A DNA stretch of 64,000 nt from Octopus bimaculoides (lineage: Eukaryota). Both the position numbers and the translations under genes were made by a program. The stretch lies in the NCBI RefSeq assembly GCF_001194135.2, contig NC_068989.1, forward strand, positions 24,473,695-24,537,694. The letters are read 5' to 3'. This document shows, in pieces, positions 11,118 to 62,400 of the stretch (the stretch's first letter is position 1; every line of letters starts with the position of its first letter). A model generated the notes under the pieces. That model made no database searches and was not told where the DNA came from. It worked only from the letters and a program-made list of their open reading frames with translations.

Positions 11118-12320
11118 CTGTGGTGAAATAGTAAGTAAAGTAATGGGTTTAGGTGAGTACTGCCACATTACTCAAGATTTGTGTTTGAATGAATCATATT
11201 GTAATTGACTTCTGTTGGTTTTTCAAAGATATCTTAATCTGCACTGGATAAACCTTATCCATCATCTAAACCTTTCTAAGACGATCTATGCCCAAGTTTA
11301 TTTGCCCTCCTCTGGTGCTCTTAACATGCTTACTGTTTCACAAAACCTTACACCACTAAAATTTTATCCTTTGCCTCAAAGCTACTGCACACCAACACAT
11401 ATTACGGTCCATGTTTTCCTTGTAGGCAGCAACCTGCTGAAATGAAATTCAAGCTGAACATCAATTGTATTGATCTCAGGTATCTGGAATTGGCTTGAGA
11501 AAGCTAACGGCAATGGACACTGCTAAAATATGAAAGCGACATATTTATTCACAGTTAACCAACCAATCAGCTTGTTCAGTGCTTAGATGTAAAAGAGACA
11601 AAATCTGGTTTTGTAGATTCATAACACGATGTAACACGATTCTTGTCCTTGGGTAACAACTGTTATTTCCTATTTGCTTACCCCTAAAAAGTATGAAAAA
11701 TGGCTAATATTTCCTTCAAACTTTGCTTTTGTTACATTTATTCAAACCCCAAAGAATCCCTCTCAACATATGGCTATGGTGCTCCCCCACTACTCCTGCT
11801 CATGATCAGAGATGCACATATTGTCAGCCACTAAGGGACATGCTCAAGTGGTTAAAGTCAAGCAACTGACAAGCAAATCTATGGTACTGAAGAGAATATT
11901 TGTAATAATGATATTTCTGCTTCAGCATCTCATCACTGACTCTGTCTGAAATGTAATGGAGAGTAGGTCAGTTTCAAAATATTGATGTTCAGGTTACAAA
12001 AGCAAAGCTGGAAGAGAATAGTTGTCATTTCCTTTGATTTCTAGTTAGAAACAAACAGGAAATAACACTTACTGACCAAAGAAAAATAAATTGTTACACA
12101 GCGTAATTCACAGTTTTAATTCAAATAAGCAACAATCACGTCCCAGAACCAATAAGAAGGTTGATTCCCAGCAATTAGATTACATTAAATTATCACTGGT
12201 CGTACAGACTCATAGTACATAAGTAACCATGAAAAATCTGTGATATACATTTAGCAAAGCAGAATTGATTACAATAACTAGTGGCTAATATGCTTGTTAT
12301 AAATGCTCTTGTTGTCCAAT

Positions 12321-12702
12321 TGTTGGCACTCCGTCGCCTACGACGTCGAGGGTTCCAGTTGATTCGATCAACGGAACAGCCTGCTCGTGAAATTAACGTG
12401 CAAGTGGCTGAGCACTCCACTGACACGTGTACCCTTAACATAGTTCTTGGGGATATTCAGCGTGACACAGTGTGACAAGGCTGACCCTTTGAATTACAGG
12501 CACAACAGAAACAGGAAGTAAGAGTGAGAGAAAGTTGTGGTGAAAGAGTACAGCAGGGTTTGCCACCATCCCCTGCCGGAGCCTCGTGGAGCTTTAGGTG
12601 TTTTCGCTCAATAAACACTCACAACGCCCGGTCTGAGAATCGAAACTGCGATCCTATGACCGCGAGTCTGCTGCTCTAACCACTGGGCCATTGCGCTTCC
12701 AC
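12321..12702 (-). mobile_element. tRNA-derived SINE (about 380 bp family, copy 1)
   Basis: Pol III A box (TGGCCCAGTGG) and B-box-like GTTTCGATTC at the 5' end; CAA-type tail; 11-bp TSD TGTTGTCCAAT. Confidence 0.9.
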
Positions 12703-13176
12703 TGTTGTCCAATATATAAATATAAAGTGTAAAAAAAAAACAAAAGAAATCCATTCTCCAGTCACTATAATTTTTTGCATAGTTTTATTTTCCCTAATGA
12801 TCCTTAATTTGTTAAAACTCATTTTTGACTTTTGTTTAGCCACAGTCCATTGGTAAAGCAGGGCTGTTCCATTTTATAAAAAGTAACTTTCAAGGCAAAT
12901 ATCATGTGGTGATTGTTAATGAGCATCACCATCATACTTTTGCTGTTGTTCCTTTCCAATCTTGAAAATCATGTCTTGCCAAGAGGAAATATTACCTTGT
13001 TTAAAAACAGGTGAAGGTTGGCAGCAGGAGGGGTATCCAGCCGTAGAAAATCAACCTCAACAAATTCTGCTCAACACATGTAAGCATGGTAAAGTGAATG
13101 TTAAAATGATGTTCATGATGATATATGTATGCATGAGAGAGTGAGAAAGAGTGATAAATTATCAAAGAAAGCTCAC

Positions 13177-17327: not shown

Positions 17328-18627
17328 GCATCTATAGAAATCCACACCTTACAAGATAGCAATCTGGGAGTCGCACCAATGGATTTCTCATGGTTGAAAA
17401 TGCCTGTAATCAGCCATTTATTATTTTTTTATTTGCTTCCAAAGAGGTGAATTTTTGCATTAAAAATAATTTTAAACCATAACTTCTAACAATTTTCAGG
17501 TCGGAGAAATACACCAGCATTCGCAAACATGAGTTAAGTCCCCTTCTAGTGACAGTGTAAAGAGAGAGAGAGAGAGAGAGATAACAGATTTTTAAAATTT
17601 CGTCTTTTTAGTGAGCTTTACACAATATAAATGATATTCTCCGTTTCTCCACAACTAATTTCCAAATTTGCTGAATCCATTGCTCTACTCATAGCGGCAT
17701 ATAGCTGGTCGTGTGTGAACATGGGGTAGAGCAGAAGTTACCAGAGCAAAGATCCTAAGTGTTGACTNNNNNNNNNNNNNNNNNNNNNNNNNNNNNNNNN
17801 NNNNNNNNNNNNNNNNNNNNNNNNNNNNNNNNNNNNNNNNNNNNNNNNNNNNNNNNNNNNNNNNNNNNNNNNNNNNNNNNNNNNNNNNNNNNNNNNNNNN
17901 NNNNNNNNNNNNNNNNNNNNNNNNNNNNNNNNNNNNNNNNNNNNNNNNNNNNNNNNNNNNNNNNNNNNNNNNNNNNNNNNNNNNNNNNNNNNNNNNNNNN
18001 NNNNNNNNNNNNNNNNNNNNNNNNNNNNNNNNNNNNNNNNNNNNNNNNNNNNNNNNNNNNNNNNNNNNNNNNNNNNNNNNNNNNNNNNNNNNNNNNNNNN
18101 NNNNNNNNNNNNNNNNNNNNNNNNNNNNNNNNNNNNNNNNNNNNNNNNNNNNNNNNNNNNNNNNNNNNNNNNNNNNNNNNNNNNNNNNNNNNNNNNNNNN
18201 NNNNNNNNNNNNNNNNNNNNNNNNNNNNNNNNNNNNNNNNNNNNNNNNNNNNNNNNNNNNNNNNNNNNNNNNNNNNNNNNNNNNNNNNNNNNNNNNNNNN
18301 NNNNNNNNNNNNNNNNNNNNNNNNNNNNNNNNNNNNNNNNNNNNNNNNNNNNNNNNNNNNNNNNNNNNNNNNNNNNNNNNNNNNNNNNNNNNNNNNNNNN
18401 NNNNNNNNNNNNNNNNNNNNNNNNNNNNNNNNNNNNNNNNNNNNNNNNNNTATATATATATATATATGTATGTATGTGTGTGTGTGTGTGTGTGTGTAAG
18501 TGTGATTACAATATCTGTAACTTAGTACTAGTCTTACAAAGAATAAATGCCAGGGTTGATTTGTTCAACTAAAGGTGGTGCTCCAGCATGGCTGTAGTCA
18601 AATGACTGAAACAAGAATATATATATA

Positions 18628-18937
18628 TCCAAATTGAGGGAGTAGAACAGCTAAAGTTCAGGCTACGTATGTTTCCTAGCAAGTAGATCCCCTGATGCAA
18701 TAATTCTTCAATGAGGGGTACTCAGCTAGCTCCTCATCAGGCCAAAGGTACCTTAATTATATGAAGGTTACAACTTATGATCCCTTAATGACAGTGTAAC
18801 CTTCATATAATTAAGGTATCTTCAGTCTGATGAGCAGCTAGCTGAGTACCCCTATTTGGGTAATTAATACATCAGAGGATCTGCTAGCTTAGAAACATGT
18901 AGGCTGGATTTTACTTGCTCCACTCCTTTAATTTGGA
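18628..18937. repeat. Foldback element (two ~144-bp arms, 22-nt spacer) with a hammerhead-like motif on each arm
   Basis: 18628-18772 is an imperfect reverse complement of 18795-18937. CTGATGAG at 18827 and GAAACATGTA at 18892 on plus; the reverse-complement core lies at 18733-18740 and 18672-18675. Confidence 0.85.
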
Positions 18938-21810: not shown

Positions 21811-22452
21811 ATTATTATCATTTAACACCCATTTTCCATGCTGGCATGGGTTAAACAATTTGACTGGAACTGATTAGCTGGAGAGCCACACCAGGTTCTA
21901 ATGTGATTTGGCACTGTTTCTATGGCTGGATGCGCTTCCTAATGCCAACCACTCAGAGATGGCACCCATGCCACTGGCATGGTGCCAGTTGCGTGACACT
22001 AGTATCTGCCACAACTATGATTTCATTTGGCTCAATGAGTCTTCTACCCAAGCACAGCATATTGGTAAAGGTCTCAGTCGTTTGTCATTGCCTCCGCAAG
22101 GCCCAATGCTCAAAAGGTGCTTTTTATGAGCCACTGGTACAGGTGCTAGTTACGTGACACCAGCATCGGCCACAACTACAATTTCACTTGGGTTGATGGG
22201 TCCTCTCAAAACATATCGCCAAAGCATATGGTATGGCATATCACCAAAGGTCTCAGTCACTAGTCATTGCCTCTGTGAAGCCCAACGTTCAAAGATTATA
22301 TATCTTGGGGTAGACATTTACCTGGCTGGCTCCTGTCAACCGTTCTATTTATGCACACATGGAAGATAGGACATTAAAAGATTATGATGATGACACACAT
22401 ACACTCAGATATAATTATATATATATATATATATACACACACACATATATGT

Positions 22453-23235
22453 GTGGTCTGATCAATAAGTATCCAGACTGTTACCACAGTAACGAAGCTA
22501 ATGCATGCAGAGTGAAGCCACTTGGCACAGATTGACCTTGAACTCTGCTGTGTATGTGCTCTAAGTTTTAATATTCTAGCTCACTTCCACTGTTTACAGC
22601 AGTTCTTGGAAGGAAGGTGTGTAGTGTGTGATTGTTGCATTGACCACGACAAAGTTGAGCAGAGAATCTGCATCAAATTTTGGCTAAAGCTTGGCAATAC
22701 CTGCTCAGAGGCCTACGCAAAGTTTCCAAAAAGTTTTCATTCTCGACACAATCAAGGAGATCTTGTGCAACTGAAACACGAGTGTCTTTTTCATCAGCTG
22801 AATCTGCACATCCCCTGATAATTCATGGACGGTGATTTGGAGATTTCTCCTCCCAGCAGCACACACATCTGCTGGTTGCAGGTCTCCCAGAATGCTTGTC
22901 ACTATCAACATTTTTTCGGCCATCTTGGAAACATCTGAACCACTCGTACACTTGTGTGCGGCTCATACACTCCTCTCTATACACTTTTTGCAACTTTGCA
23001 TAGACCTTTGAGCAGGTATCACCATGACCACTTTCTCTGTCATGGTCAATGCGATGATCACATGCTACACACCTTCCTTCCAAGCACTGCTGTAAACAGC
23101 AAAAGTGAGCTAAAATGTTCAAACTTAGTGCGCATGCACAGCAGGGTTCAAGGTCAATCTTTGCCAAGCAGCTTCATTCTGTGTGCTTTAGCTTTGTTGC
23201 TATGGCAACAGTCCAGATATTTATTGATCAGATCT

Positions 23236-23236
<1 letters not shown>
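22453..23236. mobile_element. Mariner derivative made of two inverted 5' halves
   Basis: TIRs GGTCTGATCAATAAGTATCCAGACTG at both ends. Plus frame 'EQRICIKFWLKLGNTCSEAYAK'; minus frame 'TCSKVYAKLQKVYREECMSRTQVYEWFRCFQDGRKNVDSDKHSGRP' (mariner HTH). Confidence 0.85.
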
Positions 23237-23266
<30 letters not shown>

Positions 23267-26205: not shown

Positions 26206-26261
<56 letters not shown>

Positions 26262-26262
<1 letters not shown>

Positions 26263-26630
26263 TATGGGTACAGGACATCACAAAATGTAAACAACACAAA
26301 ATACAAAAGCAACATGAATTATGAAATATGAAGGCAAACTTGGGTATGCAAACAAAGAGAAACAAATGGAAAACAAGACAAGTAACATAAAGAACGACCC
26401 TTCATCAGTTGTTAGCTGTTCTTCTAGTCCTGCTCGAAATGTAGAGTAGTTGAACAGCCAACAACTGATGAAGGGTTGTTCTTTATGTTACTTGTCTTGT
26501 TTTCCATTTTTTCTCTTGTTATTTGCATACCCAAGTTTGCTTTCGTATTTCATGTTGTTTCCGTATTTTGTAATTCATATCGTTTTCGTATTTCATGTTG
26601 TTTATGTGTTGTGACGTCCCGTACTCATAT
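26262..26630. repeat. Foldback element (~160-180-bp arms, 30-nt spacer) in (TA)n context
   Basis: 26262-26421 is an imperfect reverse complement of 26452-26630; CTGATGA on both arms. Confidence 0.85.
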
Positions 26631-28597: not shown

Positions 28598-28842
28598 TAT
28601 ATATATATATGTAAGTGTATGCAGATGTGCCATATATGTATATATACAGATGTAAGTATATGTTTAGTGTATAATTATGTATAACAGTAAACAAATGTAT
28701 ATGTCTATACATGTGTGTGTGTGTGTGTTTATTAACATGGAATGATAATGGCAGTTTTACGTTTTTCAGCAACTCCATTGTCTGATGTTTTATCTTACTG
28801 ATCTTCTTAAAATTGTTTTAGATGGCCTGGCTGCTTCCTACT

Positions 28843-31560
28843 GGTGGGGTGGATATCCAGGAACCTGCGTACACATCTATGTTCGTTAGTATGTTTTCTT
28901 TCTTTTATGTTTTGGTTAAATTCTTGGAGTGTTTATGTATGCATGTGGTGTGTATGTAGGGGTACAATATGTGTGGGAGCTTATATTGGGGATGATGGAA
29001 AATGGTATCTTGGGTAGATATCCACCATGTTAAGGCATGTGTGTTTGTGAGTGCATTTGTGCATGATTGATCAAAGAACTGGTGGCCTTCGAGAATGACT
29101 TTTTGAACATTATACCACACCTGAAATTCCATAAGCCCTTTAATGCTTTCAATTGTAAACTTAGAGCAGACATCTGTTGACTGAGATGTTCTGATATGAC
29201 TCTTCTCTTCTCTGATAAAACTAAAAATCTGTACAGAATAAGTAATGATACATATGCACAGCTACTTAACAGCAACATCACACAAACGTACAGGAGGGCA
29301 GCCCTTCAAGCTTACGATGGCATTTTCTATGAGGCCAAAGATATTGTGGTTAAACTAGGTATAGAGGATAGGGTAGAGACATTAACAAAGAAAGAAGCCC
29401 TTATTATGATCAAGGACCATAAACCAAACTTTGTCTCTAACCCCAAGTACAGGCTGATGAACTCTGCGAAGTTTGAGATTGGACAGGGAAACAAACAGCT
29501 CATCAGGAAGATCAATAACAGTGTTCTGGCCTCACCCTATGGCATAACACCAATGAGGTCATAACATGGTTTAAAACCAATTGTGAAAGGGTAGAGCTAG
29601 GTTTAACCAATTCGATATAGTGGGCTTTTACCCATCTATGTTGCGGAAGCTCCTTTTTAAGGCATTAGATTTTGCTAGGTCCTATACTGAAGTTAGTGAT
29701 GAGGACATACACATTATCATGTACACCAGAAGAACCATACTCCTCAGTAAGGGGTTGGCCTGGGCCAAACGAACTGAACCAGAAGGCTCCTTTGACATAA
29801 CAGTGAGCACTTTTGACAGTGCTAATGGGTGTGACCTCATTGGTTTCTTCATCCTAGATTTACTCAAAAAGTAGTTCCCTTCCTTCTACAGGGATGATGT
29901 ACTGGCAATATCAGGAGGGGCAAATGACCACACACTGAATAAGCTTAGAAAAGACCTCACCAACACCATGAATTTCCTTGGAGTGAAGGTCATGATAGAA
30001 ACCAACCTGAAAATGGTGGATTTCCTTGATATGACCCTGGACTTGGAGTCTGGTGCCTATAAACCCTTTAGGAAGTCAAATGAAAAGCTATCATGTATTA
30101 ACACAGGTTCCTATAATCCAGCTATAGTTTTCAAGAACCTGGTAAAGGGTGTCAGCAGAAGTCTCTAACCTGTCTTCAAGCAAAGGGATTTTTGATGCTG
30201 CTGTCCCATACTATAATGAGGCTCTGGCTGCCAGCAGTTTCAAAGAAAGAATTAATTATACACCAGACTCTAATCCCTCCAAGATAAAATGCTATCAGAA
30301 AGTGTTGTGGGTTACACTGCCCTTCTTTTTAAGTGTTAAAACCTGAGCAGGTAAGATTTTCCTCAGTAGATAAACAGTTTCCTTGTATAAATAGGTTCAG
30401 TAAAATAATAGGCACACCCAGAGAGTTTCCTTTAGCTGTGCACCCATGTAAAAAAGACTTTTGTAGGTAGGCCCACACCTGAGACAGAGATAGGATGCTC
30501 ATGTACGCTAACAACATATGAGACAGAGGTAAAAGTAACAGACTCAGATGGGCAACCAAGTGTGTGAAAGTATATGAGAGCAACTGAAGGCCCCTTCAGA
30601 ACTGGCTATAACAACCACAATTCCTCCTTCAACATTCCGGAGAGATGTAATGCAACAATCCTGGCCAAGCACGTATGATCATTGAAAGAATGCATTGTCA
30701 AGAACAGCATAAAGTGGAGGATTCTAGAGAAATGTAAAGCATACTTTAATAACAGCAGGAGGTGCAGATTATGCCTGACTGAGAAAAGAGTAATATTGAA
30801 GAGGTTTCAGCACCCAGGTATCTACCTGAACAGCAGAACAACAGAAGTGACATTTTTATTCCTTGCCCACATGAAAGGAAGTACATCCTACCATACCTGC
30901 ATGCCCCATCATGACTATAATCCCCAGTACCCTAGCTTTGGCCCTCCTTCCATCAATACCTGGGGGTCAGGTGAAGAGTTTGACCAGAACATACACAAAT
31001 GCACAAACAAATACAACCACCTTAACATGGTGGACATCCAACCAATAGGCTATTTTCCACCATCCTCAATATGAGCCCCTACACATACTGCATGCATACA
31101 TCAGCACACCTCAAGAATTTACCCAAAACATAAAAGAAAGAAAGCACACTAACAAACACAGATGTGTATGCAGGTTTTTGGATATCCTCCACCCCACACC
31201 CCACAAAGGCTATACCACTACAAATATCCCATTTTTACAAGAGTTACCTTAAAGATACACACACTTCCAATAAACTCTTCCAGCAAACACTTGCCAACTT
31301 GCAACACCTCCAGAGATGGTGTTTTTGATACCAACAGATGTAACAACCCTTGCTTAGTTCGTTTCATCAGTCTTTTTCACAGCAAGCACAAACCAGATGT
31401 GTCTGTTCACCTCCAACAATAGAAAACAGTCACCGTATTTCATTCCATAATTGCCATCTCTGAAGAGTATAGAGTTACATAATCAGACTGTTACTTAACA
31501 CGACGTTGAACCCTTGATGTGAAACCGATTGGTAAGACTGGCTATAATGGATATATAATA
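28843..31560 (+). mobile_element. Decayed Penelope-like retroelement (RT plus GIY-YIG) with inverted 5' pseudo-LTR
   Basis: Fragmented frames: 'IKDHKPNFVSNPKYRLMNSAKFEIG', 'FDIVGFYPS', 'YRDDVLAI', 'VDFLDMTLDL', 'ATEGPFRTGYNNHNSSF' and 'IKWRILEKCKAY...CRLCLTEK'. 28843-29082 is an inverted copy of 30984-31200. Confidence 0.88.
31452..31543 (+). ncRNA. Degenerate type I hammerhead-ribozyme-like motif at the 3' end of the Penelope-like element
   Basis: GCCATCT-CTGAAGA-G...GAAA-CCGATTGG-TA-AGACTGGC. Stem I (GCCATCT/AGACTGGC), core, short stem III and a GUA triplet are present; stem II is poorly paired. Confidence 0.55.
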
Positions 31561-37254: not shown

Positions 37255-38437
37255 CTAAAATTAAAATAAAAGAATCCCGCCAGTAAAAATCAAAAATTAA
37301 TATTTTTGCCAGTATGGAAAAGGAAACATTAAATGATGATGATGATGATCATCATCATCATCTCTCCTAGAAAATTACAGATGATATGTGATGAGTAATG
37401 ATGTTTTGATCAGAAGCATTTAAAGGACCTTAAACAATGATGTTGATAATGATTTCAAATATATTAATCTCTCCTCTAATCCTTAGAAAATTGCAGATGA
37501 TAGCATTCATAAAATACATTTGTATGTTGCGTGTGAGATGAGTTATGGTGTTTTGGTTAGGGTCCTGTATAAAAGAAGCTACAAATGGTCAAATAGACAT
37601 GGTACCTGCAGGTCAGTCGTTCATATTTGGATGTTGTCTCTGCATTAGGTCAGTAAACATGGATCTTATCTCCTAACAGCCTCCACTTCTTAGATGTGAA
37701 CTTGTGCTACTGATAGATGTAATTCATGGGAGTAAACAGTGGATAAATCTGTCTTGATTTTACAGATTCATTGGCAAGAGTTTATCCCAATTTCCATGGC
37801 ATTTAAGGATCTCAGAGTACAAGACCAACTCCACTGAACAGGACACCATTCCATCACAAAACTAAACCCACTTCCAGCTACTTCCAGAACTCATTGTTTA
37901 GCTAACTGTACTGCAACAACCTGCAATGAAGTGTTAACCCTTTCACTTACAGATTATTTTGTCAAATTTAATGGTTATTTATTCACATTGTTTTGAAATA
38001 ATCATGCCTTATCTTGTAGCTTTGAGATTTTGACGACCTCATTGGTTATTTTTAGACAGACATTGTAGCACAGGTGTGAGAGGTTGGCTCTCACCAATTT
38101 GAACATAAAACAGGTAGTATATTTTGGCCAAATATAGCAGGTTTAATCCTAAAGTATTTAAACTGGCTACATCCAGCCACAATATTCTGCCTGTTTCATG
38201 TTCAAATGGGCCTGATCCAACATCCTACACCTGTTATTCTAAAAATAAGTAATCACATCATCGAAATCGTGAAGCCACAAGATAATGCATGATTAATTGA
38301 AAACAATGCGAATAAATAAACATTACATTTGACAGAGTAATCTGAATGCTTAAAAGTTAAATGCTAAAATGTTAATCAAGGACTTAACATGTTATCTAGT
38401 CTAAGAATCGAATTCACAACCCTACAATTGTGAGCCC

Positions 38438-38652: not shown

Positions 38653-38763
38653 CTGCAAAGTGGTTAGTTGATTTCCATCCAAAGACAGCCACCTCAGTAA
38701 GAGTAGTTTGCCAACAATAGATAAGTCCTGCAGGTAGCAGTGATCAAGGCAGAGGGAGGTGAT
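38653..38763 (-). CDS. LRRC9: LRRC9 exon (ITSLCLDHCYLQDLSIVGKLLLLRWLSLDGNQLTTLQ)
   Basis: Long polypyrimidine tract then ctccag|; CAG|gtaggt donor; 37 codons; LRR motifs. Confidence 0.92.
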
Positions 38764-39295
38764 CTGGAGGGTAAGAGAGAGAGAGAGAGAGGAAATAGAG
38801 CATAAGAGAAAAGGTGATGGAGACAAAGAAGAGAGGAGGAAGAAGAAGAGAAGGGTAAGGAGAGAACGGGAGAAAGAGGGGGGTGGGTGAAGAGAGAAAG
38901 AGGAAGAAATGAGGAATGGGACAGAAAGAGGCAAGGGAAAGAGGTGAAAATATGGAAAAGGAGAAACAGAGAGGAAACACAATGAGAGACAGGGAGAAAA
39001 AGAGAAGTGAATTANNNNNNNNNNNNNNNNNNNNNNNNNNNNNNNNNNNNNNNNNNNNNNNNNNNNNNNNNNNNNNNNNNNNNNNNNNNNNNNNNNNNNN
39101 NNNNNNNNNNNNNNNNNNNNNNNNNNNNNNNNNNNNNNNNNNNNNNNNNNNNNNNNNNNNNNNNNNNNNNNNNNNNNNNNNNNNNNNNNNNNNNNNNNNN
39201 NNNNNNNNNNNNNNNNNNNNNNNNNNNNNNNNNNNNNNNNNNNNNNNNNNNNNNNNNNNNNNNNNNNNNNNNNNNNNNNNNNCATGTTATAATTG

Positions 39296-39394
39296 CATAC
39301 TTTATTCCTACATATGTTTCAAAGGATTACAACCTGTGTGATCCATAGGGATCTTTGATATTAAAGTTGTAACCTTCTCATCAGGGAAAGCATG
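39296..39394 (-). ncRNA. Type I hammerhead ribozyme motif (left arm; sense in LRRC9 pre-mRNA)
   Basis: Mirror copy of 39462-39560; the single difference lies in the stem II loop. Confidence 0.75.
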
Positions 39395-39461
39395 GGAATC
39401 ATCTTAAACGTAAGACATTATGACCGAATCAGTCATAATGTCTTACGTTTAAGATGATTCC

Positions 39462-39560
39462 CATGCTTTCCCTGATGAGAAGGTTACAATTTTAATATCA
39501 AAGATCCCTATGGATCACACAGGTTGTAATCCTTTGAAACATATGTAGGAATAAAGTATG
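39462..39560 (+). ncRNA. Type I hammerhead ribozyme motif (right arm)
   Basis: Stem I CATGCTTTCC/GGAA(TAA)AGTATG; core CTGATGA (39472-39478); stem II GAAGGTTACAA/TTGTAATCCTTT; GAAA (39536-39539); palindromic stem III ACATATGT; GUA cleavage triplet (39545-39547). Confidence 0.75.
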
Positions 39561-39597
39561 CAATTATAACATGCGTTTTCTCCATTCCTTAAATTCT

Positions 39598-39632
<35 letters not shown>

Positions 39633-39916
39633 GGAGAGAGAGAGGGAGAAGAGGAGAGTGAAGCAGATAGGAATTGAAAGAGAGCAAGTGAAAAGGAAAC
39701 TGCATGGAAGTAATGGAAAAGCAGAAAGGAAAGAAAGGAAGAGAAGCAAAGGAATGTGGAGAGGGAAGAAGAGAGTCAAAGAGAGTGAGAATAAGAGATG
39801 CAGGGATGGGGGAGGGGTAGAAGAGAGAAAGAAAGGAGGGAGAAAGAGTGAGAGAGAGAGAGACAGAGATAGACAGACAAATAGTAAGTGCGTTACAAGT
39901 GAGTTTCATTGACAAC

Positions 39917-40183
39917 CTTTAAAAACATTTGTTCCTCAGTGATATCCATGGTTTGAAACACACATTTGCTGGACTCCACTAAGACTTGGGCTTTATTGTG
40001 CAGACTCAATATTCTTGGAGTCCTGATATCCAGGCGAGACCGGCGCTTTAGCAGAGCCAATCGTGTCTGGTAGCGTTTGGTAAGAGCCGTCACACGCTGT
40101 CTCTCATCATTGCTTACTTCTATGCCGTTGATAGCTTCGAGATTTTTCAGGTAGAAAAGTAGCTGAATACGTAAATCAGAGGG
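39917..40183 (-). CDS. LRRC9: LRRC9 exon (PSDLRIQLLFYLKNLEAINGIEV...RTPRILSL...QMFLK); LRR cap
   Basis: catttcag| acceptor, AAG|gttgtc donor; 89 codons. Contains an LRR-cap motif and the conserved 'PRILS'. Confidence 0.92.
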
Positions 40184-43758: not shown

Positions 43759-44153
43759 CTGTTGTTGTTGTTGTTGGCACTCCGTCGCTTACGACGTCGA
43801 GGGTTCCAGCTGATCCGATCAACGGAACAGCCTGCTCGTGAAATTAACATGCAAGTGGCTGAGCACTCCACAGACACGTGTACCCTTAACGTAGTTCTCA
43901 GGGATATTCAGCCTGACACAGTGTGACAAGGCTGACCCTTTAAATTACAGGCACAACAGAAACAGGAAGTAAGAGTGAGATAAAGTTGTGGTGAAAGAGT
44001 ACAGCAGGGTTCGCCACCATCCCCTGCCGGAGCCTCGTGGAGCTTTCGGTGTTTTCGCTCAATAAACACTCACAATGCCCGGTCTGGGAATCGAAACTGT
44101 GATCCTATGACCACGAGTCCGCTGCCCTAACCACTGGGCCATTGCACCTCCAC
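43759..44153 (-). mobile_element. tRNA-derived SINE (same family, copy 2)
   Basis: Full-length match to 12321-12702; (CAA)n tail; ACCGTATT on both flanks. Confidence 0.88.
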
Positions 44154-44857: not shown

Positions 44858-45240
44858 TGGTTGGCACTCCAACGGTTACGATGATGAGGGTTCCAGTTGA
44901 TCCGATCAAAGGAGTAGCCTGCTTGTGAAATTAACGTGCAAGTGGCTGAGCACTCCACAGGCACGTGTACCCTTAACGTAGTTCTCGGGGATATTCAGCG
45001 TGACACAGAGTGACAAAGCTGGCCCTTTGAAATACAGGTACAACAGAAACAGGAAGTAAGAGTGAGAGAAAGTTGTGGTGAAAGAGTACAGCAGTGTTCA
45101 CCACCATCCCCTGCCGGAGCCATGTGTAACTTAAGGTGTTTTCGCTCAATAAACACTCACAACACTCGGTCTGGGAATCGAAACCGTGATCCTACGACCG
45201 CGAGTCCGCTGCCCTAACCACTGGGCCATTGCGCCTCCAC
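44858..45240 (-). mobile_element. tRNA-derived SINE (same family, copy 3)
   Basis: Full-length match; inserted in a (CA)n tract 85 nt from an LRRC9 donor. Confidence 0.88.
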
Positions 45241-49616: not shown

Positions 49617-50819
49617 CTGAAACCATAACAAACAGAATAGAAATTAGAACATAGCTGGTTGATGTATAATTTGATTATATGAAATAAACACACATTTCTT
49701 TACCTTTCATCTGTTCAGGGTCAGTAAAATAAGTAACAGTTGAGTACTGGGGTCAATGTAATTGACTACCACCTCCTCCAAAAAGGCAGGCCTTGTGCTA
49801 AGATTTAAAATCAATGTGAATATAGTCTGTAAGCTGGCAGAAACTTTAGCATGCTGAACAAAATGCCTTGTGGCATTTCTTCCATGTTTACAATCTGAGT
49901 TCAAATTCTACTGAGGTCGATTTTGCCTTTCATACTCTTGGAGTCAATAAGTACTAGTTGATGTAATCAACTAGCCTCCCCTGCTCCCTCACCAAATTCA
50001 GGCCTTGTGCTTATAGTAGAAAGGATAGTACATACTTAATACATTACTCTAAAGCATGAATATATTCTTTTCTACACTAGGCACAAGATTTGAAATTTTT
50101 GGAGAGGGAGCCAGTCAATTAGATTGACCCCAGTATATAACTGGTACTTAATTTATTGACTCCAAAAGGATGATAGGCAAAGTCGACCTCGGTGGAATTT
50201 GAACTCAGAATGTAAAGACAAATGAAATACCACAAAGCATTTTGCTGGGCATGCTAACGATTCTGCCAGCTTGCTGTCTTAAAGCATAAATATATTGAGG
50301 CCTAACAGCTGATTATTAGTATTACTTTCTCAAAGTGAAATCATTAAATATAATTTTATTTATAATAATGAGCACTTGGGTCAACCATCCAGGAGAAGAA
50401 AACTGCAAATACCAAACAAATTGAATAAAGCATGTTACTATCGGATCAGGAAATAAAAGTCAGTTTCAGTTTATGATATTATTCTTCTGTAGTCAATGTT
50501 TGTCCTGTGTAAGACATTAAACTGCTTCTAGAAGTGATGCTCCAGCTGAAGAGTTCAGGAGTTTGGGAGACCATGGGGTTACCCACTAGTCACTACTACT
50601 CCCAGGTCTGCTCTTGCCTGGAGTGGTGGTTTCTGTCAAGGGCCCAGTTTAGGGTCAAATAAAAGATGGTACTGACACTAATGCATGCAGCACTTAGAGG
50701 ATGGTTGACCTCTGGACATGTGCCGCACAGGCCTACTAGAGTGTGGACATGCCCTGATATCACATAGATCAATCCTTGCTTCCACCTAAGGATTAAACAG
50801 GCTCTGTGTCCTAAGGGTA

Positions 50820-51130: not shown

Positions 51131-51772
51131 TCCTGAACAGCAATAATTAGTATTTTACTTTTTCATTTCGGGTTTCCAATTCTCAACCACAACTAATGTT
51201 CTTTACTCCCAACATTCTCAGTTGGTTGCATGAATTGGTTATGTAATTCCTTCTCTTTCCAGTTACTTGTCCTGTTGTTTTTCTACTTGTTCCTTTAATA
51301 GAAATGCTTATCATTATTATTATTATTAGTAATAGTAGTATTTAGTCTCAGGTTAGCTCTGAGTGAGCGAACCTATGAAGAAATGCTTAAAAGCTGTGAT
51401 CACCAGTCTTTGAATACATGAACTATCATCATATGTGTCCTTCCTTTTTTAAGATGGTGGTGAGTGATCTGAAGGAATTTGGCTGCTATTTCAACCACAT
51501 CAAGTTACCACACAGAAGCCCTTTCACTGGCTAAAACTAAACTCAGGGTAGTCAAGAAGAGTATGATAATTGTGTATATGCTCTGCAAAGCAGTTGGCAC
51601 GAGAAAGGGTATCTGTCGCAGAAACCATGCCAAGGCAGACATTATAGCTTGGTGCAGTCCTCTGGTTTGTTGGTTCCTGTCAAACTGTTCAACCCATGTC
51701 AGCATGAAAAACAAATGTTAAATGATGGTGATGATAGTTATGGTGGTGGTGGTGGTGGTGGTGGCAATGGCA

Positions 51773-52156
51773 GTGGAGGCGCAATGGCCCAGTGGTTAGG
51801 GCAGCGGACTCGCGGTCATAGGATTGCGGTTTCAATTCCCAGACCAGGCGTTGTGAGTGTTTATTGAGCGAAAACACCTAAAGCTCCACGAGGCTCCAGC
51901 AGGGGATGGTGGCGAACCCTGCTGTACTCTTCCACCACAACTTTCTCTCACTCTTACTTCCTGTTTCTGTTGTGCCTGTATTTCAAAGGGTCAGCCTTGT
52001 CACACTGTGTCACGCTGAATATCCTCGAGAACTACGCTAAGGGTACACGTGTCTGTGGAGTGCTCAGCCACTTGCACGTTAATTTCACGAGCAGGCTGTT
52101 CTGTTGATCGGATCAACTGGAACCCTCAATGTCGTAAGCGACGGAGTGTCAACAAC
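51773..52156 (+). mobile_element. tRNA-derived SINE (same family, copy 4, opposite orientation)
   Basis: Reverse complement of copies 1-3; 12-bp TSD GTGGCAATGGCA. Confidence 0.9.
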
Positions 52157-52854: not shown

Positions 52855-55215
52855 TACAATTCACTCATCATTTTTGCAACTTTCAATAAACTCACTTGAG
52901 GACAGCACTTCCCTCTCCACTCTCAATTTCCTTTTCAAGTGAAACTTGAAGTCAATGAGAGCTCTACCAAAGAGGAATGTATCTGTTCTCATGCCTTTCA
53001 GCCTTGTCCACCAAACAATCTCTTTTGCCACAGCCACCAGGCAAAGGAAAGCTGCCTTGCCTGCCCGATTGAAGGAGGGCAGCAGTGCGATCATCACTAA
53101 GGACTTGGTCAACAGACAGATCTGTCCCACACATGACAGCAGTTGTTCAACATAACCCCACAAGTCAGCAATGCCTGGACAGTGAACAAAGGCATGCAGA
53201 ACAGTTTTGTCACTCTGTGTGCACCTCAGACAAGTCCATCTGACAGCACATCTGTGCCTATAGAGTTTATCTCGAACCAGTAGCACTGCCAGGACAAGGA
53301 CATCTGGAAACTAGCCATAATAGTTCCTGACCGGAAAGTCCTCCGGAACAGACTAGCCAGTTTGTTCTTGTTGGTACCCAAAGTCTCCCCAAGAACATCG
53401 TCGCACTTCTCCACCACAAATCTTCTATAAGTTTCTAAAGCAGAACATCCACCGATCCCATTGCCTGACAGATAGAGGGTTGTGAGTGCCTGATGACATT
53501 CTAGGTGCCAGGTGTTCAGTCTCGGTCTTTTCTTTACCCAGGACTGCAGCTCCGTCAAGGAGACAAGTGGTGGAAAGACAAGCCTCACAAGTGGAGCCCA
53601 CACACACTCACCATCCAGAAATCATTGCAGGTGGCGTAACCTAAGAGCGTGTCTGCACATTAGGAGCCATACCTAATCTGCCACTCGGAGGATGTTGGCA
53701 ACAGAGGATGTGGTCAAGCAATAACTGGGGCAAGGCACGACAGTCAGGTGATAAATAGTAATGGAGGTGATGTAAGCATTCACCAACTCTGTCTGATCTT
53801 TCAGGGACAGCTTTCTTCCAGTCCATTTCTGGGTGAGACTGGCCACCCTGTTTGCCACCTTGTCCCAGTTTCTTATCAACCTGGAAGTTTGGATTAAACC
53901 AGACCCCAAGCACTTTAACTAGTCCATCAGTCCAGCATCTGCTGCCGCTGTCTGATTGCATCGTCCTGCCTCTCCAGGAGCCCAACTACAAACCAACCAA
54001 TTTGTCAGTGTTGATTTTAGCCCTTGCAACTGACCCATATTCCTCTGGACTGATATTGATTTTCTCACACGAGGGTGACAATATGGTTCTGTGGAAGTGA
54101 GGTTCCTCACAGAGTTGCTGACCCCAAAATACTCAATGGTCCAGTGCAAACATGTGGGAAGGAGAAGAAGATTCTCATATTTGCACTGGACCATTGAGTG
54201 TTTTTGGGTCAACAACTCTGTGAGGAACCTCACTTGCACAGAACCATATTGTCTCCCTCATGTGAGAAAATCAATATCAGTCCAAATGCCTTTCAAATAT
54301 TGTTCTACTTGGATGTGTGGCGCAATGAAGATTTTCCTCCTCTTTAGTGACTCACATCTGTATATGATGGTCCTTCTGGCCATCTTCTCCATCAAATCTG
54401 AAGGATAGCAAGCTTGGTTTCCCTATTGAGGAGTTTTTCTGCTTCACTCAGGTGTGCATGTTTTCCTTCCAGGGAGATTTACTGGCGCAATTTTGTTACT
54501 CTTGCAAAGGAGTTGTTTTTATCATTACTGTTATTGTTGGTGTTGATTATATTGATTTTGCTGCTGGTGTTGTTCCCATCGTTGTTGGCGTTAGTCGGAG
54601 CCAAAGCGACGCTGTTGTTTGTGGTGATGTTCATATTGTTGACCGAAGTAACCAAGCTACTTGCTAATGGAGGGAAATCATTTACATCGTAGCTGCACTG
54701 CTTATTTGTCTCCCACGTCAAAGCTTTACTGTTGTTGCTGTTGCTGCTACAGTTGTTGTTGTTGTTTGTAGTGGTAGTGGCAGAGGTGATGATGGTAGTG
54801 GTGTCAGAGTTGTTGTTGTTTGTGATTGGGATGGTCATCTTGTTTTGCCTGCTTGCTTGTCTAATGGTCAAGCCAACAGATGAAGAACTGTTACCCTCTC
54901 TCATTTTTGTAGGAAAACATTCCTCTGTCTCTTCCCCTCTCACATCAACGACTGAAACCCCTTTGAAACTCTTTGTTGCTGCCATTGAGCAAAATTCTAA
55001 ATTTTACCATGTGGAATAAATGGAATAAATTTGATAAGTCCCCCAAGAAGTAGGGGGACTTTTAACAAAAAAGGAACTCATCAGCAGAAGAAGGATCCCC
55101 TATTCTCCACCCTGGTTGAAAATGACAGGAAAGCACCACTATTTTCCGGAGAAAACTGATGATTTTCGAAAACAAGATATGGCACCGAGATCCAGCGTGG
55201 CTTCGTCAGCTGATG
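52855..55215 (-). mobile_element. Internally deleted Tx1/L1-clade LINE
   Basis: ORF1-like low-complexity frame (54479-54985). ORF2 C-terminal remnants 'KVLGVWF', 'W..RKLSLK....VNAYI.S', and the CCHC-like 'CLRCTQSDKTVLHAFVHCP...LW.YV'. Endonuclease and most of the RT are absent. Confidence 0.8.
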
Positions 55216-58944: not shown

Positions 58945-59290
58945 TGTTTGTTACCAGCGTCGCCTTACTAGCACGTGAAAAAACATTTGAGTGAGGTCAT
59001 TGCCAGTGCCACTGGATTGGTTCCTGTACAGGTGACATGTAAAAAACACCATTTGAGTGTGGCCGTTGCCAGTACCGCCTGACTGGTCCTCGTGCTGGTG
59101 GCACGTAAAAGCACCCAGTACACTCTCGGAGTGGTTGGAGTTAGGAAGGGCATCCAGCTGTAGAAACTCTGCCAAATCAGATTGGAGCCTGGCGCAGCCA
59201 TCTGGTTCACCAGTCCTCAGTCAAATCCTCCAACCCATGCTAGCATGGAAAGCGGATATTAAACGATGATGATGAAGATGATGATGACAT
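58945..59290 (+). mobile_element. RTE-type 3'-end short element with internal ~46-bp subrepeats and (GAT)n tail
   Basis: Shares the GAAGGGCATCCAGCTGTAGAAAC...CATGGAAA.CGGAC.TTAAACGATGAT end with the RTE copies. Many others near 1995-2320, 6590-7005, 21830-22150, 24920-25250, 27020-27175, 36380-36680, 49100-49430, 56600-56930, 61270-61550 and 63888-64000. Confidence 0.8.
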
Positions 59291-60204: not shown

Positions 60205-61491
60205 CTGGAAAGATATGAAATTAAAACTGGCATTATATTTGTGTTATTATAGGAAATTATTACATAATCATAGGAAATTTTTATTATATACACTAAAGTT
60301 TCTGTGCCAGCATACAATGAAGAGATTAATAATGTAAAAATCAAATGGAATTACATGTTCACTGAGTGGAAGCTCTCTTTCAAAAGAGAGCTTCTATGTA
60401 ATCACTTGTTCTAGAAATAGTAACCAAATCTCCCTCAAATCATATCCTACTATCTTGAATTAGGAAAGGACACATTAGATAAGGTAGTCCTACATATCTT
60501 TAGTTGAAAGGGTAAAGACCCCCTTTGATCATGAATGACTGCAGGATTGTACCTAGAAGGTTCCTCTCCAGGGCACAAGTCCTGGCAAGGTTGTTTATGG
60601 AAGACCAGCAGTCACCCATGAATACAAGTCTCCTCTCTCCATGCCACCAATGTTATCCAAGGGAAAGGCAAAGGCTGATACAGCTTGGCACCTGTGACAT
60701 CGCAACTTATTTCTACAGCTGAGTGAACTGGAGCAATGTGAAATAAAGTGTCTTGCTCAAGAATACAACACACAGCTTGGTCCAGGAATCAAACTCACTA
60801 CCTCATGACTGTGAGCCCAATGCTCTAACCACTGAGCCATGCATACCTTTAGTAAATAAAACAAAACAAAACAAACAGCATAATCACTGTTGAGATATTT
60901 TTAATAAGTTTGTTTGATCAGAAGTGTCATGAAACTAAATAAGACCAGTCATTACAATAATATATGAGTATCATAGAGCAGAATTAAGATCTTGATTTGA
61001 TTTCTGGGTGTAACTATTTCATTTCTCACACATTGATAGTAAGCATTCAGAAAGACATAAACCACCTATAAATTAGGATTTCCTATCTTGATAGTTTACT
61101 CTGACACCCATCACCAACATTTTAATCTTCTTTCCAGCTCCTCCCAGACTTATGTAATGTAGGCTAACTACCAATCTCCTCTATTCCAAGACACCTGTGC
61201 CTGTCCCTCTACATCTGGCATAAAACCACTTCCTTTTCTACTGCAACCTCACTCAGTTGAGGGTTTTTTTCTTCTTTGTCTTGCAATTTACTTGGCAACC
61301 TCATTAGTGCTGGTGTCACAAGAAAAGTACCCAGTACACTCCGTAAAGTGGTTTAGTATGGGCATTAGTAAGGGCATCCAGCTGCAGAAATCATTCCAAA
61401 ACACAGTGGAACTTAATGCAGTTCTCCAGCTTGTTTGATCCTGTCAAACTATTCTATCTATGCCAGCATGGGAGATAGATGTTAAATGGTA

Positions 61492-61959: not shown

Positions 61960-62400
61960 AAAAGGTTATAGGTACCAGTGTCTATCTAGGTTTAATGTCA
62001 CATCCAAGAAATCACTCATTTTCATGTTGGTCTCTATCGTGGCTTTGAATCCAGGAGAATTAAGGGCATGGGATAGTTCTTTCCCTTGCCTTTCAAACAT
62101 GTGGCTGTTTGCCTCTCTTGATATCACCAAGGTATCATCCCCATACAGGCCAGAACTAGTTGAGGGGAATTTCCTACAAAGCTTAACTATATTAACTAGG
62201 TCTATAGGGTCACATACATGAGCATTGTTGAATGTTGCCATTGCAATGTCAAAGGAACTTTCCAGGTCAGTCTGCTTAACCCAGATCAGGGTTTTCCTGG
62301 TGTGCATGATGATGTTTATGTCCATATTGCTAATCACACACACACAAAATGAGCTCAGGGTGGTCAAAAACAAAAGGCAGTAACTATTTCTAGAGAGTTA
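61960..62400 (-). mobile_element. Penelope-like RT fragment (same family as 29600-30060)
   Basis: 'IIMHTRKTL..WVK......FDIAMATF..A.VCD', 'GLYGDD' and 'TNMKMSDFLDVTLNL'. Confidence 0.8.

What the first reader, a model, noticed from the sequence alone, without database searches (positions are those of the whole stretch)
39283..39573. Twin-hammerhead foldback element: a 290-bp palindrome carrying an apparently intact hammerhead ribozyme on each strand
Seen: 142-bp arms, one mismatch, 7-nt spacer. Each arm read outward from the centre has a full type I hammerhead layout: bulged stem I, CUGAUGA, stem II, GAAA, palindromic stem III ACAUAUGU and a GUA site. The only core-adjacent deviation is G10.1 pairing with U instead of C. 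Established: minimal type I hammerheads with palindromic stem III occur in Penelope-like pseudo-LTRs and non-autonomous retrozymes and often act as dimers. Inference: this is a small non-coding element that presents a ribozyme whichever strand is transcribed. In LRRC9 pre-mRNA the antisense arm is made first, so the long hairpin would compete with ribozyme folding. That could be a self-silencing switch that lets the element survive in introns, and it would also be a dsRNA substrate for ADAR or Dicer.
Basis: partly seen in the sequence, partly recalled or inferred. Interest (0 to 1): 0.9.

Follow-up and report, generated by a model that had tools for sequence, protein, structure and literature searches.

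The report
Inverted pair of hammerhead retroelement copies
The palindrome and its two outward-facing hammerhead ribozyme motifs are real, but they look like the known head-to-head insertion product of a small Penelope-like (retrozyme-type) retroelement in a TA microsatellite, not a new ribozyme switch.

Summary
The arms are 39283-39424 and 39432-39573, with one mismatch and a 7-nt spacer. Each arm, read outward from the centre, has a complete type I hammerhead layout with a G10.1-U11.1 wobble.

Three points change the picture:
- The left arm starts exactly at an assembly gap, so 290 bp is a lower bound. Homology with a second locus shows the arm runs to about 39597, directly against a (TA)10 array.
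- No Rfam hammerhead model matches, even at E<=10. The 10.1-11.1 pair is non-canonical in all four arms examined, so "apparently intact" is overstated.
- A second, older twin-hammerhead palindrome lies at 18629-18936. Its arms are 79-84% identical, it is not at a gap, and it also abuts (TA)n. Its geometry is nearly the same: C3-to-C3 spacing is 87 vs 88 nt, and the C3-to-A17 span is 75-77 vs 76 nt.

The architecture is therefore real and recurrent, which makes an assembly artefact unlikely (about 10%).

It fits published Penelope-like element (PLE) biology: hammerheads near the 3' end, adjacent inverted copies, (TA)n targeting, and a protein that cleaves and extends both DNA strands.

In any read-through transcript the antisense arm is made first. 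The ribozyme is then locked in a -247 kcal/mol hairpin, so the "switch" idea has no support. No relatives were found elsewhere. I rate it a new member of a known kind, of modest interest.

The parts
39015..39282 (.). Assembly gap (268 N). It hides the outer ~24 nt of the left arm and whatever flanks it.
   Evidence: The extent of the hidden arm is inferred from the right arm running to ~39597.
39283..39424 (-). Left arm, a copy of the element on the minus strand. The hammerhead domain is ~39290-39401, with C3 at 39384 and A17 at 39309 (cleavage 3' of 39309 on the - strand). It has C where the right arm has U in helix II, giving G-C instead of G-U.
39425..39431 (.). Spacer CGAATCA at the head-to-head (5'-to-5') junction.
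39432..39573 (+). Right arm, a copy on the plus strand. The hammerhead domain is 39455-39566: CUGAUGA 39472-39478, helix II domain 39479-39535 (57 nt), GAA 39536-39538, helix III ACAUAUGU 39539-39546, and A17 at 39547.
39574..39597 (+). 3'-terminal extension of the right copy, beyond the assembled palindrome. The motif CTCCATTCCTTAAATTCT (39580-39597) matches the termini of the 18.6-kb locus at 14 of 18 positions.
   Evidence: plus a direct comparison of the sequences.
39598..39617 (.). (TA)10 microsatellite directly abutting the element's 3' end. This is the probable integration target. It is followed by (GA)n.
   Evidence: Only 3.1% of the window lies within 30 nt of a (TA)>=6 array.
18629..18936 (.). 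Second, older twin-hammerhead palindrome (308 bp). Its arms are 79-84% identical, with a 22-nt spacer. Hammerhead-like motifs run from C3 18827 to A17 18901 (+) and from C3 18740 to A17 18664 (-). (TA)6 at 18617-18628 abuts its left end. It is not at a gap edge.

Best explanation
The locus is a head-to-head (inverted) double insertion of a short hammerhead-bearing retroelement of about 145-165 nt. The element is non-coding and related to Penelope-like elements, that is, a retrozyme-type non-autonomous derivative of a PLE 3' end or pseudo-LTR. It integrated into a (TA)n microsatellite inside an intron.

Mechanism (inferred): the PLE reverse transcriptase/GIY-YIG endonuclease cuts both strands of the self-complementary TA target. 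Each 3' end primes cDNA synthesis from the 3' end of an element RNA, and the two cDNAs meet 5'-to-5' at the centre. A snap-back of one cDNA would give the same product. Each outer end is therefore an element 3' end next to TA repeats, and each arm carries the hammerhead pointing outward.

The hammerhead belongs to the element's own RNA life cycle. It probably acts in trans-dimers through the palindromic helix III, as described for PLE and retrozyme hammerheads. At this locus it has no function. In host pre-mRNA, or in any read-through transcript, it is sequestered in a >=142-bp perfect hairpin.

Shown: the palindrome, the hammerhead layout, the TA adjacency, the second locus with the same geometry, and the intronic position. 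Inferred: the retro-origin, the PLE machinery, the twin-priming step, and the lack of local function.
For: - The hammerhead layout is complete on both arms and far beyond chance.
- The single-arm minimum-free-energy fold reproduces helices I and II.
- The one difference between the arms is U/C opposite G in helix II, so pairing is kept.
- A second palindrome at 18629-18936 has the same architecture. C3-to-C3 spacing is 87 vs 88 nt. The C3-to-A17 span is 75-77 vs 76 nt. The core blocks CUGAUGAG, GAAACAU and GUAG are invariant while overall identity is only 48-55%. The terminal motif is conserved. Its arms have diverged by about 20% and it sits away from any gap, so such palindromes are genuine genomic structures here.
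- Conserved cores and spacing on a diverged background point to selection on an RNA function in the element family.
- Both loci abut (TA)n, at about 3% chance each.
- PMC8557442: PLE insertions are often accompanied by an adjacent inverted 5'-truncated copy and disturb short-read assemblies. Hammerheads sit in the pseudo-LTR near the 3' end. Hydra-clade, Naiad and Neptune PLEs target microsatellites such as (TA)n.
- PMC4209133: a short helix III with a palindromic loop is typical, and dual hammerheads on opposite strands 100-700 bp apart have been seen.
- PMC11167929: a PLE protein cleaves and extends both DNA strands and is predicted to be a dimer.
- bioRxiv 10.64898/2026.07.22.740005: retrozymes derive from PLE pseudo-LTRs, and monomers are dispersed, many of them in introns.
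Against: - No autonomous PLE (RT plus GIY-YIG ORF) with a matching 3' end was found in the window.
- No relatives were retrievable from any collection, so family-wide conservation rests on two loci.
- The centre falls at the same place in both loci, 43-44 nt upstream of C3. Random 5' truncation of a long PLE would not predict this. It requires a short unit with a defined 5' end, or an intrinsically palindromic element.
- No Rfam hammerhead hit.
- G10.1-C11.1, which is highly conserved in known PLE hammerheads, is G-U here and G/A or G/G at the second locus.
- The unit folded as a circle is not unusually stable (z -0.6), and there is no tandem array. It is therefore not a typical retrozyme.
- The left flank is hidden by the gap, so target-site structure cannot be read.
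Confidence: 0.6

Rival explanations
1. The ~310-340-bp palindrome is itself the mobile unit. It would be a foldback-type non-autonomous retroelement (a 'foldback retrozyme') whose conserved geometry is selected, for example because either strand yields a ribozyme-bearing RNA or because the hairpin RNA is the template.
For: Two of the two hammerhead loci in the window are palindromic, with almost identical C3-to-C3 spacing (87 vs 88 nt) and conserved termini. The core motifs are unchanged in both arms of the old locus despite ~20% arm divergence. That would be expected if the arms were already diverged when copied from functional masters. The chance of it otherwise is about 0.04, which is weak evidence.
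Against: There are only two loci. A perfect long hairpin is a poor template and traps the ribozyme. The known PLE integration mechanism already yields inverted dimers, and a short unit with a fixed 5' end explains the constant centre.
Confidence: 0.14
2. It is a DNA-transposon MITE, a foldback element with arm-long terminal inverted repeats that targets TA and happens to carry a hammerhead-like sequence.
For: It has a palindromic structure, a size of ~310-340 bp, conserved termini and TA-rich insertion sites. Other foldback elements without hammerheads are present in the window at 26262-26630, 37934-38360 and 54046-54284. An AT/AT dinucleotide flanks the 18.6-kb copy, which is seen directly in the sequence but is weak evidence.
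Against: A DNA transposon has no reason to keep the hammerhead core boxes and spacing invariant while the rest diverges to ~50% identity. The termini show no similarity to the mariner-like element or to the other foldbacks in the window.
Confidence: 0.13
3. The 39.4-kb palindrome is an assembly or gap-closing artefact. Only the right arm would exist, and the contig end was folded back on itself.
For: The left arm starts at the first base after a gap, and the arms are 99% identical. The assembly is a gappy short-read draft, with 8 N-runs in 64 kb.
Against: - None of the other seven gaps shows a comparable near-identical fold-back at its edge. The only other self-complementary edge, at 26206, is an (AT)n run leading into a 77%-identical foldback.
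- The arms differ at one internal site, and the spacer is asymmetric.
- A genuine diverged palindrome of the same architecture lies 21 kb away, inside a contig.
- Real PLE inverted structures are documented to break short-read assemblies (PMC8557442).
Confidence: 0.1
4. The hammerhead resemblance is coincidental and the sequence is an ordinary inverted repeat.
For: No Rfam hammerhead match. The fold z-score of the single arm is only -1.27. The 10.1-11.1 pair is non-canonical.
Against: The expected number of chance hits is 0.013 per window. The looser core pattern gives 5 hits against 0.08 expected. The same core blocks and spacing recur at an independent locus. Control sequences with the same core strings lack the helices.
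Confidence: 0.02

Closest known systems
Penelope-like element insertions with an adjacent inverted 5'-truncated copy and hammerheads in the pseudo-LTR (Craig et al. 2021, PMC8557442; Cervera & de la Pena 2014, PMC4209133)
   Same: A hammerhead sits close to the element's 3' end. The copies are arranged head-to-head as an inverted pair. Insertion is into (TA)n. The structure disturbs a short-read assembly. Dual hammerheads on opposite strands 100-700 bp apart have already been reported.
   Different: There is no RT/GIY-YIG ORF or longer PLE body at either locus. The junction lies at the same position in two diverged loci, rather than at a random truncation point. Helix II is a 57-nt domain, against 6-8 bp in PLE min-hammerheads. 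Helix III is present as 2 bp plus a tetraloop.
Metazoan non-LTR retrozymes (Cervera & de la Pena 2020, PMC7229834; Li et al. 2026 preprint)
   Same: It is a small (~150-170 nt), AT-rich non-coding unit with a type I hammerhead. Helix III has two base pairs and a palindromic tetraloop. It is probably PLE-dependent. Dispersed monomers occur in introns.
   Different: It is arranged as an inverted dimer, not as head-to-tail tandem repeats. The unit is not predicted to be a highly self-paired circle. The canonical 6-bp helix I and 4-bp helix II with loop-loop contacts are absent.
Canonical type I hammerhead ribozyme (Rfam Hammerhead_1 / HH9 clan)
   Same: All invariant core nucleotides are present: C3 U4 G5 A6 N7 G8 A9, G12 A13 A14, A15.1-U16.1 and H17. 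The three helices are in type I order.
   Different: There is no match to any Rfam model. The pairing is G10.1-U11.1 instead of G-C. Helix II is very long and bulged. Self-cleavage has not been tested.
Foldback MITEs of DNA transposons
   Same: Near-complete palindrome, ~300 bp, TA-rich target, non-coding.
   Different: It carries a conserved ribozyme core on each arm. No clear target-site duplication or transposase-related termini were found.

Membership tests
Hammerhead ribozyme (structural definition) | Invariant core CUGANGA ... GAA, with A15.1-U16.1 and H17 | tested here: met
   All core positions are present on both arms of the 39.4-kb locus, and also on both arms of the 18.6-kb locus.
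Hammerhead ribozyme (structural definition) | Three helices flanking the core in type I order | tested here: met
   Helix I is 4+6(+5) bp with a bulge. Helix II is 5+9 bp with a bulge. Helix III is 2 bp plus AUAU. At the 18.6-kb locus the helices are partly degraded.
Hammerhead ribozyme (structural definition) | G10.1-C11.1 pair at the base of helix II | tested here: not met
   The pair is G-U at 39479/39535 and its mirror, and G/A and G/G at the 18.6-kb locus. U11.1-G12 could be a decayed CpG, since CpG o/e is 0.26, but that is inference.
Hammerhead ribozyme (structural definition) | Self-cleavage 3' of position 17 | not testable with these tools
   This needs in vitro transcription or mapping of 5'-OH ends.
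Rfam hammerhead families (Hammerhead_1, _3, _II, HH9, HH10) | Covariance-model score at or above the gathering threshold | tested here: not met
   There is no hit at the gathering threshold, and none at E<=10 on the palindrome, on a single arm, or on the second locus. The 57-nt helix II is the likely reason, but that was not tested.
Penelope-like element (autonomous) | ORF with a TERT-like RT and a GIY-YIG endonuclease | tested here: not met
   There is no such ORF at or near either locus. Pfam on the window's larger ORFs gave only LRR, zf-RVT (LINE) and mariner HTH.
PLE-type insertion architecture | Hammerhead near the 3' end, an adjacent inverted copy, and a microsatellite (TA)n target | tested here: met
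   compared with the descriptions in PMC8557442.
PLE-type insertion architecture | Sequence identity of the unit to the 3' end or pseudo-LTR of an autonomous PLE in the same genome | not testable with these tools
   The genome is not available here. There is no related sequence in the window or in the metagenome, viral or GTDB collections.
Metazoan non-LTR retrozyme | Head-to-tail tandem repeats, each unit with a type I hammerhead | tested here: not met
   TRF and the repeat finder show no direct repeats of the unit. The copies are inverted.
Metazoan non-LTR retrozyme | Expressed as a highly self-paired small circRNA | tested here: inconclusive
   The circular fold of the 166-nt unit is -22.5 kcal/mol with z -0.6, which is not rod-like. 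Expression cannot be tested here.
Foldback MITE (Tc1/mariner-type) | TA target-site duplication flanking terminal inverted repeats | tested here: inconclusive
   The flanks are (TA)n or AT-rich, and one flank of the 39.4-kb locus lies in the gap.

The most novel reading that the evidence does not exclude
The ~310-340-bp palindrome with one outward-facing long-helix-II hammerhead per arm is a distinct, self-propagating class of non-autonomous PLE parasite (a 'foldback retrozyme'). Its constant geometry would be selected, rather than being a by-product of integration.
Probability: 0.14. Interest if true: 0.6.

Novelty: new member of a known kind. Interest (0 to 1): 0.33.

Why it matters
The locus adds a clean example of two things. 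One is a hammerhead variant with an unusually long helix II (57 nt) that escapes all Rfam models. The other is the inverted-dimer insertion structure of PLE-type elements at TA microsatellites, with a geometry that recurs at two loci.

If a genome-wide census confirmed a fixed palindromic unit, it would bear on how PLE machinery generates inverted copies, for example by priming on both strands. It would also extend the forms known for retrozyme-like elements.

For annotation, it shows that gap-edge palindromes next to (TA)n can be genuine. Long intronic hairpins of this kind are candidate dsRNA substrates.

It does not provide evidence for a new regulatory ribozyme switch.

Tried and rejected
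- Rfam scans at the gathering threshold and at E<=10 on the palindrome, a single arm and the second locus gave no hammerhead. The microRNA and snoRNA hits on the whole palindrome are generic long-hairpin matches far below their thresholds.
- Searches for relatives found nothing real. The viral contigs gave 0 hits. The metagenome contigs gave 0 hits, then 5 chance hits with no CUGAUGA upstream. The GTDB genomes gave 13 chance hits with no helices.
- blastn and nhmmer found no other copy in the window beyond the two loci. A weak hit at 60476-60575 is not a hammerhead.
- Host gene identity could not be settled. The neighbouring exon alone found nothing, and five concatenated exons found only generic LRR proteins, so 'LRRC9' and the species stay unverified. 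A literature search for the SINE-like repeat string found nothing.
- I tested whether the decayed element at 29-31 kb, which has inverted terminal repeats, is the autonomous PLE partner. It has no hammerhead, no Pfam RT or GIY-YIG, and no similarity to the arms. Rejected.
- I tested whether gap edges in this assembly generally carry fold-back duplications. They do not.
- I tested the retrozyme-style circle by folding the unit as a circle. It is not unusually stable.
- No supplementary sequence tables of the key papers held matching sequences.

Full report
**Observation.** The sequence at 39283-39573 is a near-perfect palindrome. The arms are 39283-39424 and 39432-39573 (142 nt). There is one internal mismatch (39366 G against 39490 T) and a 7-nt spacer, CGAATCA. 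As RNA it folds into a single hairpin of -247 kcal/mol, 40 standard deviations beyond shuffles.

On the + strand:
- CUGAUGA at 39472-39478.
- A long bulged helix II: 39479-39483 with 39531-39535, and 39484-39492 with 39521-39529, closing a 57-nt domain.
- GAA at 39536-39538.
- Helix III ACAUAUGU (two pairs plus an AUAU loop) at 39539-39546.
- A17 at 39547.
- A bulged helix I: 39468-39471 with 39548-39551, and 39462-39467 with 39555-39560.
- The mirror copy on the - strand runs from 39384 to 39309.

G10.1 faces U11.1, as stated. A home-made descriptor finds only these two hits in the window, against 0.013 expected per shuffled window. Thirteen bacterial sequences that share the same core strings have no flanking helices. 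The motif is therefore not chance. The single-arm minimum-free-energy fold reproduces helices I and II. The full hammerhead layout lies about 4 kcal/mol above that minimum.

**Caveats to the observation.**
- The left arm begins at the first base after a 268-N gap (39015-39282). The window has eight such gaps, mostly at TA repeats. The 290-bp length is therefore a lower bound.
- No Rfam hammerhead model matches at the gathering threshold, or at E<=10 on the palindrome or on one arm. The many microRNA and snoRNA 'hits' on the palindrome are generic hairpin matches far below threshold.
- The G10.1-C11.1 pair, described as highly conserved in PLE hammerheads (PMC4209133), is a G-U wobble here. U11.1-G12 could be a decayed CpG, because CpG o/e in the window is 0.26. 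That is inference.

**A second locus changes the picture.** While checking other self-complementary stretches I found a second twin-hammerhead palindrome at 18629-18936.
- It lies inside a contig, 178 bp from the nearest gap.
- Its arms are only 79-84% identical and its spacer is 22 nt.
- Both arms carry CUGAUGAG ... GAAACAU(..)GUAG. On the + strand C3 is at 18827 and A17 at 18901. On the - strand C3 is at 18740 and A17 at 18664.

Its geometry is almost the same as at 39.4 kb. C3-to-C3 spacing is 87 vs 88 nt, and the C3-to-A17 span is 75 and 77 vs 76 nt. Overall identity between the two loci is only 48-55%, yet the core blocks are invariant.

Its termini (CTCCACTCCTTTAATTTGG and CTACTCCCTCAATTTGG) match 39580-39597 (CTCCATTCCTTAAATTCT) at 14 of 18 positions. 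The right arm of the 39.4-kb element therefore really ends at about 39597, and about 24 nt of the left arm are lost in the gap.

Both elements abut a TA array at an outer end: (TA)10 at 39598-39617 and (TA)6 at 18617-18628. Only 3.1% of the window lies that close to such an array.

The looser pattern CUGAUGA..GAAAC..GUA gives five hits against 0.08 expected. Four of them are these arms. The fifth, at 22797 (-), has no helices.

At the older locus the base of helix II and helix I are partly degraded, and Rfam is again silent.

**Artefact or real?** None of the other seven gaps has a comparable near-identical fold-back at its edge. The arms differ at one internal site. That change is U/C opposite G in helix II, so pairing is kept, and the C version is 2.4 kcal/mol more stable. 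A genuine, diverged palindrome of the same architecture exists nearby. PLE inverted structures are documented to cause problems for short-read assemblies (PMC8557442). I put the artefact reading at about 10%.

**What it is.** The features match published PLE biology.
- Hammerheads lie in the pseudo-LTR near the 3' end. Insertions are 5'-truncated and 'often' accompanied by an adjacent inverted copy. Several clades (Hydra, which always carries a hammerhead and occurs in aquatic invertebrates including molluscs, plus Naiad and Neptune) insert into microsatellites such as (TA)n (PMC8557442).
- Metazoan type I hammerheads typically have a 1-2-bp helix III with a palindromic loop and act as dimers. 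Dual hammerheads on opposite strands 100-700 bp apart were already noted and ascribed to truncated PLEs (PMC4209133).
- A purified PLE protein cleaves and extends both DNA strands and is predicted to dimerise (PMC11167929).
- Retrozymes are now argued to be non-autonomous derivatives of PLE pseudo-LTRs, with dispersed monomers that often lie in introns (bioRxiv 10.64898/2026.07.22.740005).

My best explanation (confidence 0.6) is a head-to-head double insertion of a short (~145-165 nt) hammerhead-bearing, PLE-dependent unit at a TA microsatellite. It would be made in one event by priming on both strands of the self-complementary target, or by snap-back of one cDNA. The integration step is inferred, not shown.

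**Where it does not fit neatly.**
- There is no PLE ORF, or any other copy, in the window.
- A decayed element with inverted terminal repeats at 29-31 kb is unrelated. It lacks a hammerhead and has no RT or GIY-YIG Pfam domains.
- The junction sits at the same place in both loci. That implies a short unit with a defined 5' end, or an intrinsically palindromic element, rather than random truncation.
- The copies are inverted, not tandem. The unit is not predicted to be a rod-like circle. It is therefore not a typical retrozyme.
- These points keep two rivals alive: a palindromic mobile unit (0.14) and a foldback DNA transposon (0.13). The conserved ribozyme core on a diverged background argues against the DNA transposon.

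LRR exons lie on the minus strand. The element sits in an intron of about 1.2 kb between an exon ending near 39928 and one starting near 38763. The name LRRC9 and the species could not be verified.

The two ribozymes point outward, so on either strand the antisense arm is transcribed before the sense arm. The emerging ribozyme strand can then zip onto its perfect complement from the loop outward. At -247 against roughly -19 to -23 kcal/mol, ribozyme folding cannot compete.

This is what any inverted duplication would do. Nothing indicates a selected 'self-silencing switch'. ADAR or Dicer processing is plausible for such a hairpin but was not tested.

**Searches for relatives.** Scans of the viral, metagenome and bacterial/archaeal collections returned nothing real. 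Family-level conservation therefore rests on the two loci in this window. No step needed referral.

**Verdict.** It is a new member of a known kind, and interest is 0.33.

Noticed in passing
window 18629-18936 (plus (TA)6 at 18617-18628): A second, older twin-hammerhead palindrome. Its arms are 79-84% identical and its geometry is almost the same as at the reported locus. Its helix II domain contains CAUCAG, which is complementary to the CUGAUG core, so an alternative pairing that masks the core is possible.
   Followed up: yes
window 26262-26630: A ~370-bp foldback with inner arms 91% complementary, flanked by TA repeats on both sides. Its left TA run starts at a gap edge. It has CUGAUGA on both arms but no GAAA, and no similarity to the hammerhead elements. 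It is probably a different foldback family.
   Followed up: partly
window 37934-38360; 54046-54284; 49824-50279: Three further diverged inverted-repeat structures (77-86% complementary). The one at 37.9 kb begins TTAA|CCCTTTCAC, which recalls piggyBac-type termini. This rests on my own recollection and was not tested.
   Followed up: no
window 28842-31197 (+); related fragment 61966-62373 (-): A decayed, frameshifted coding element flanked by ~230-bp inverted repeats (28842-29075 and 30979-31197, 75% identical). Its pseudo-protein has two homologues of 508-567 aa with no Pfam domain (P0039, P0040). It has no hammerhead and its type is unknown.
   Followed up: partly
window 12320-12704, 43770-44153, 44860-45240, 51771-52155; also 1981-2301, 6715-7019, 58972-59290 and others: Two abundant SINE-like repeat families (~385 bp at 91-94% identity, and ~300 bp at 78-89%). 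One copy's tail (…AAATGACTGAAACAAG) runs into the TA array where the 18.6-kb element sits.
   Followed up: no
window 52861-53286 (-) and 22823-23167 (-): A LINE fragment (zf-RVT, below the Pfam cut-off) and a mariner-type HTH_48 ORF lying between ~230-bp inverted repeats (22416-22654 and 23035-23265).
   Followed up: no
whole window: CpG is strongly depleted (o/e 0.26) and TpG/CpA is in excess (1.36), at 38% GC. This implies a heavily CpG-methylated animal genome. There are 26 (TA)>=6 arrays and 8 assembly gaps, most of them at TA repeats.
   Followed up: partly
window 38760-39014 and 39618-39885: The hammerhead element with its TA array interrupts a ~1.1-kb purine-rich (GA-rich) degenerate tract. 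On the pre-mRNA strand this is a long pyrimidine tract leading into the 3' splice site near 38763.
   Followed up: no
window 22714-22797 (-): A fifth CUGAUGA...GAAAC...GUA string with no helix I and a poor helix III. It is probably chance.
   Followed up: partly
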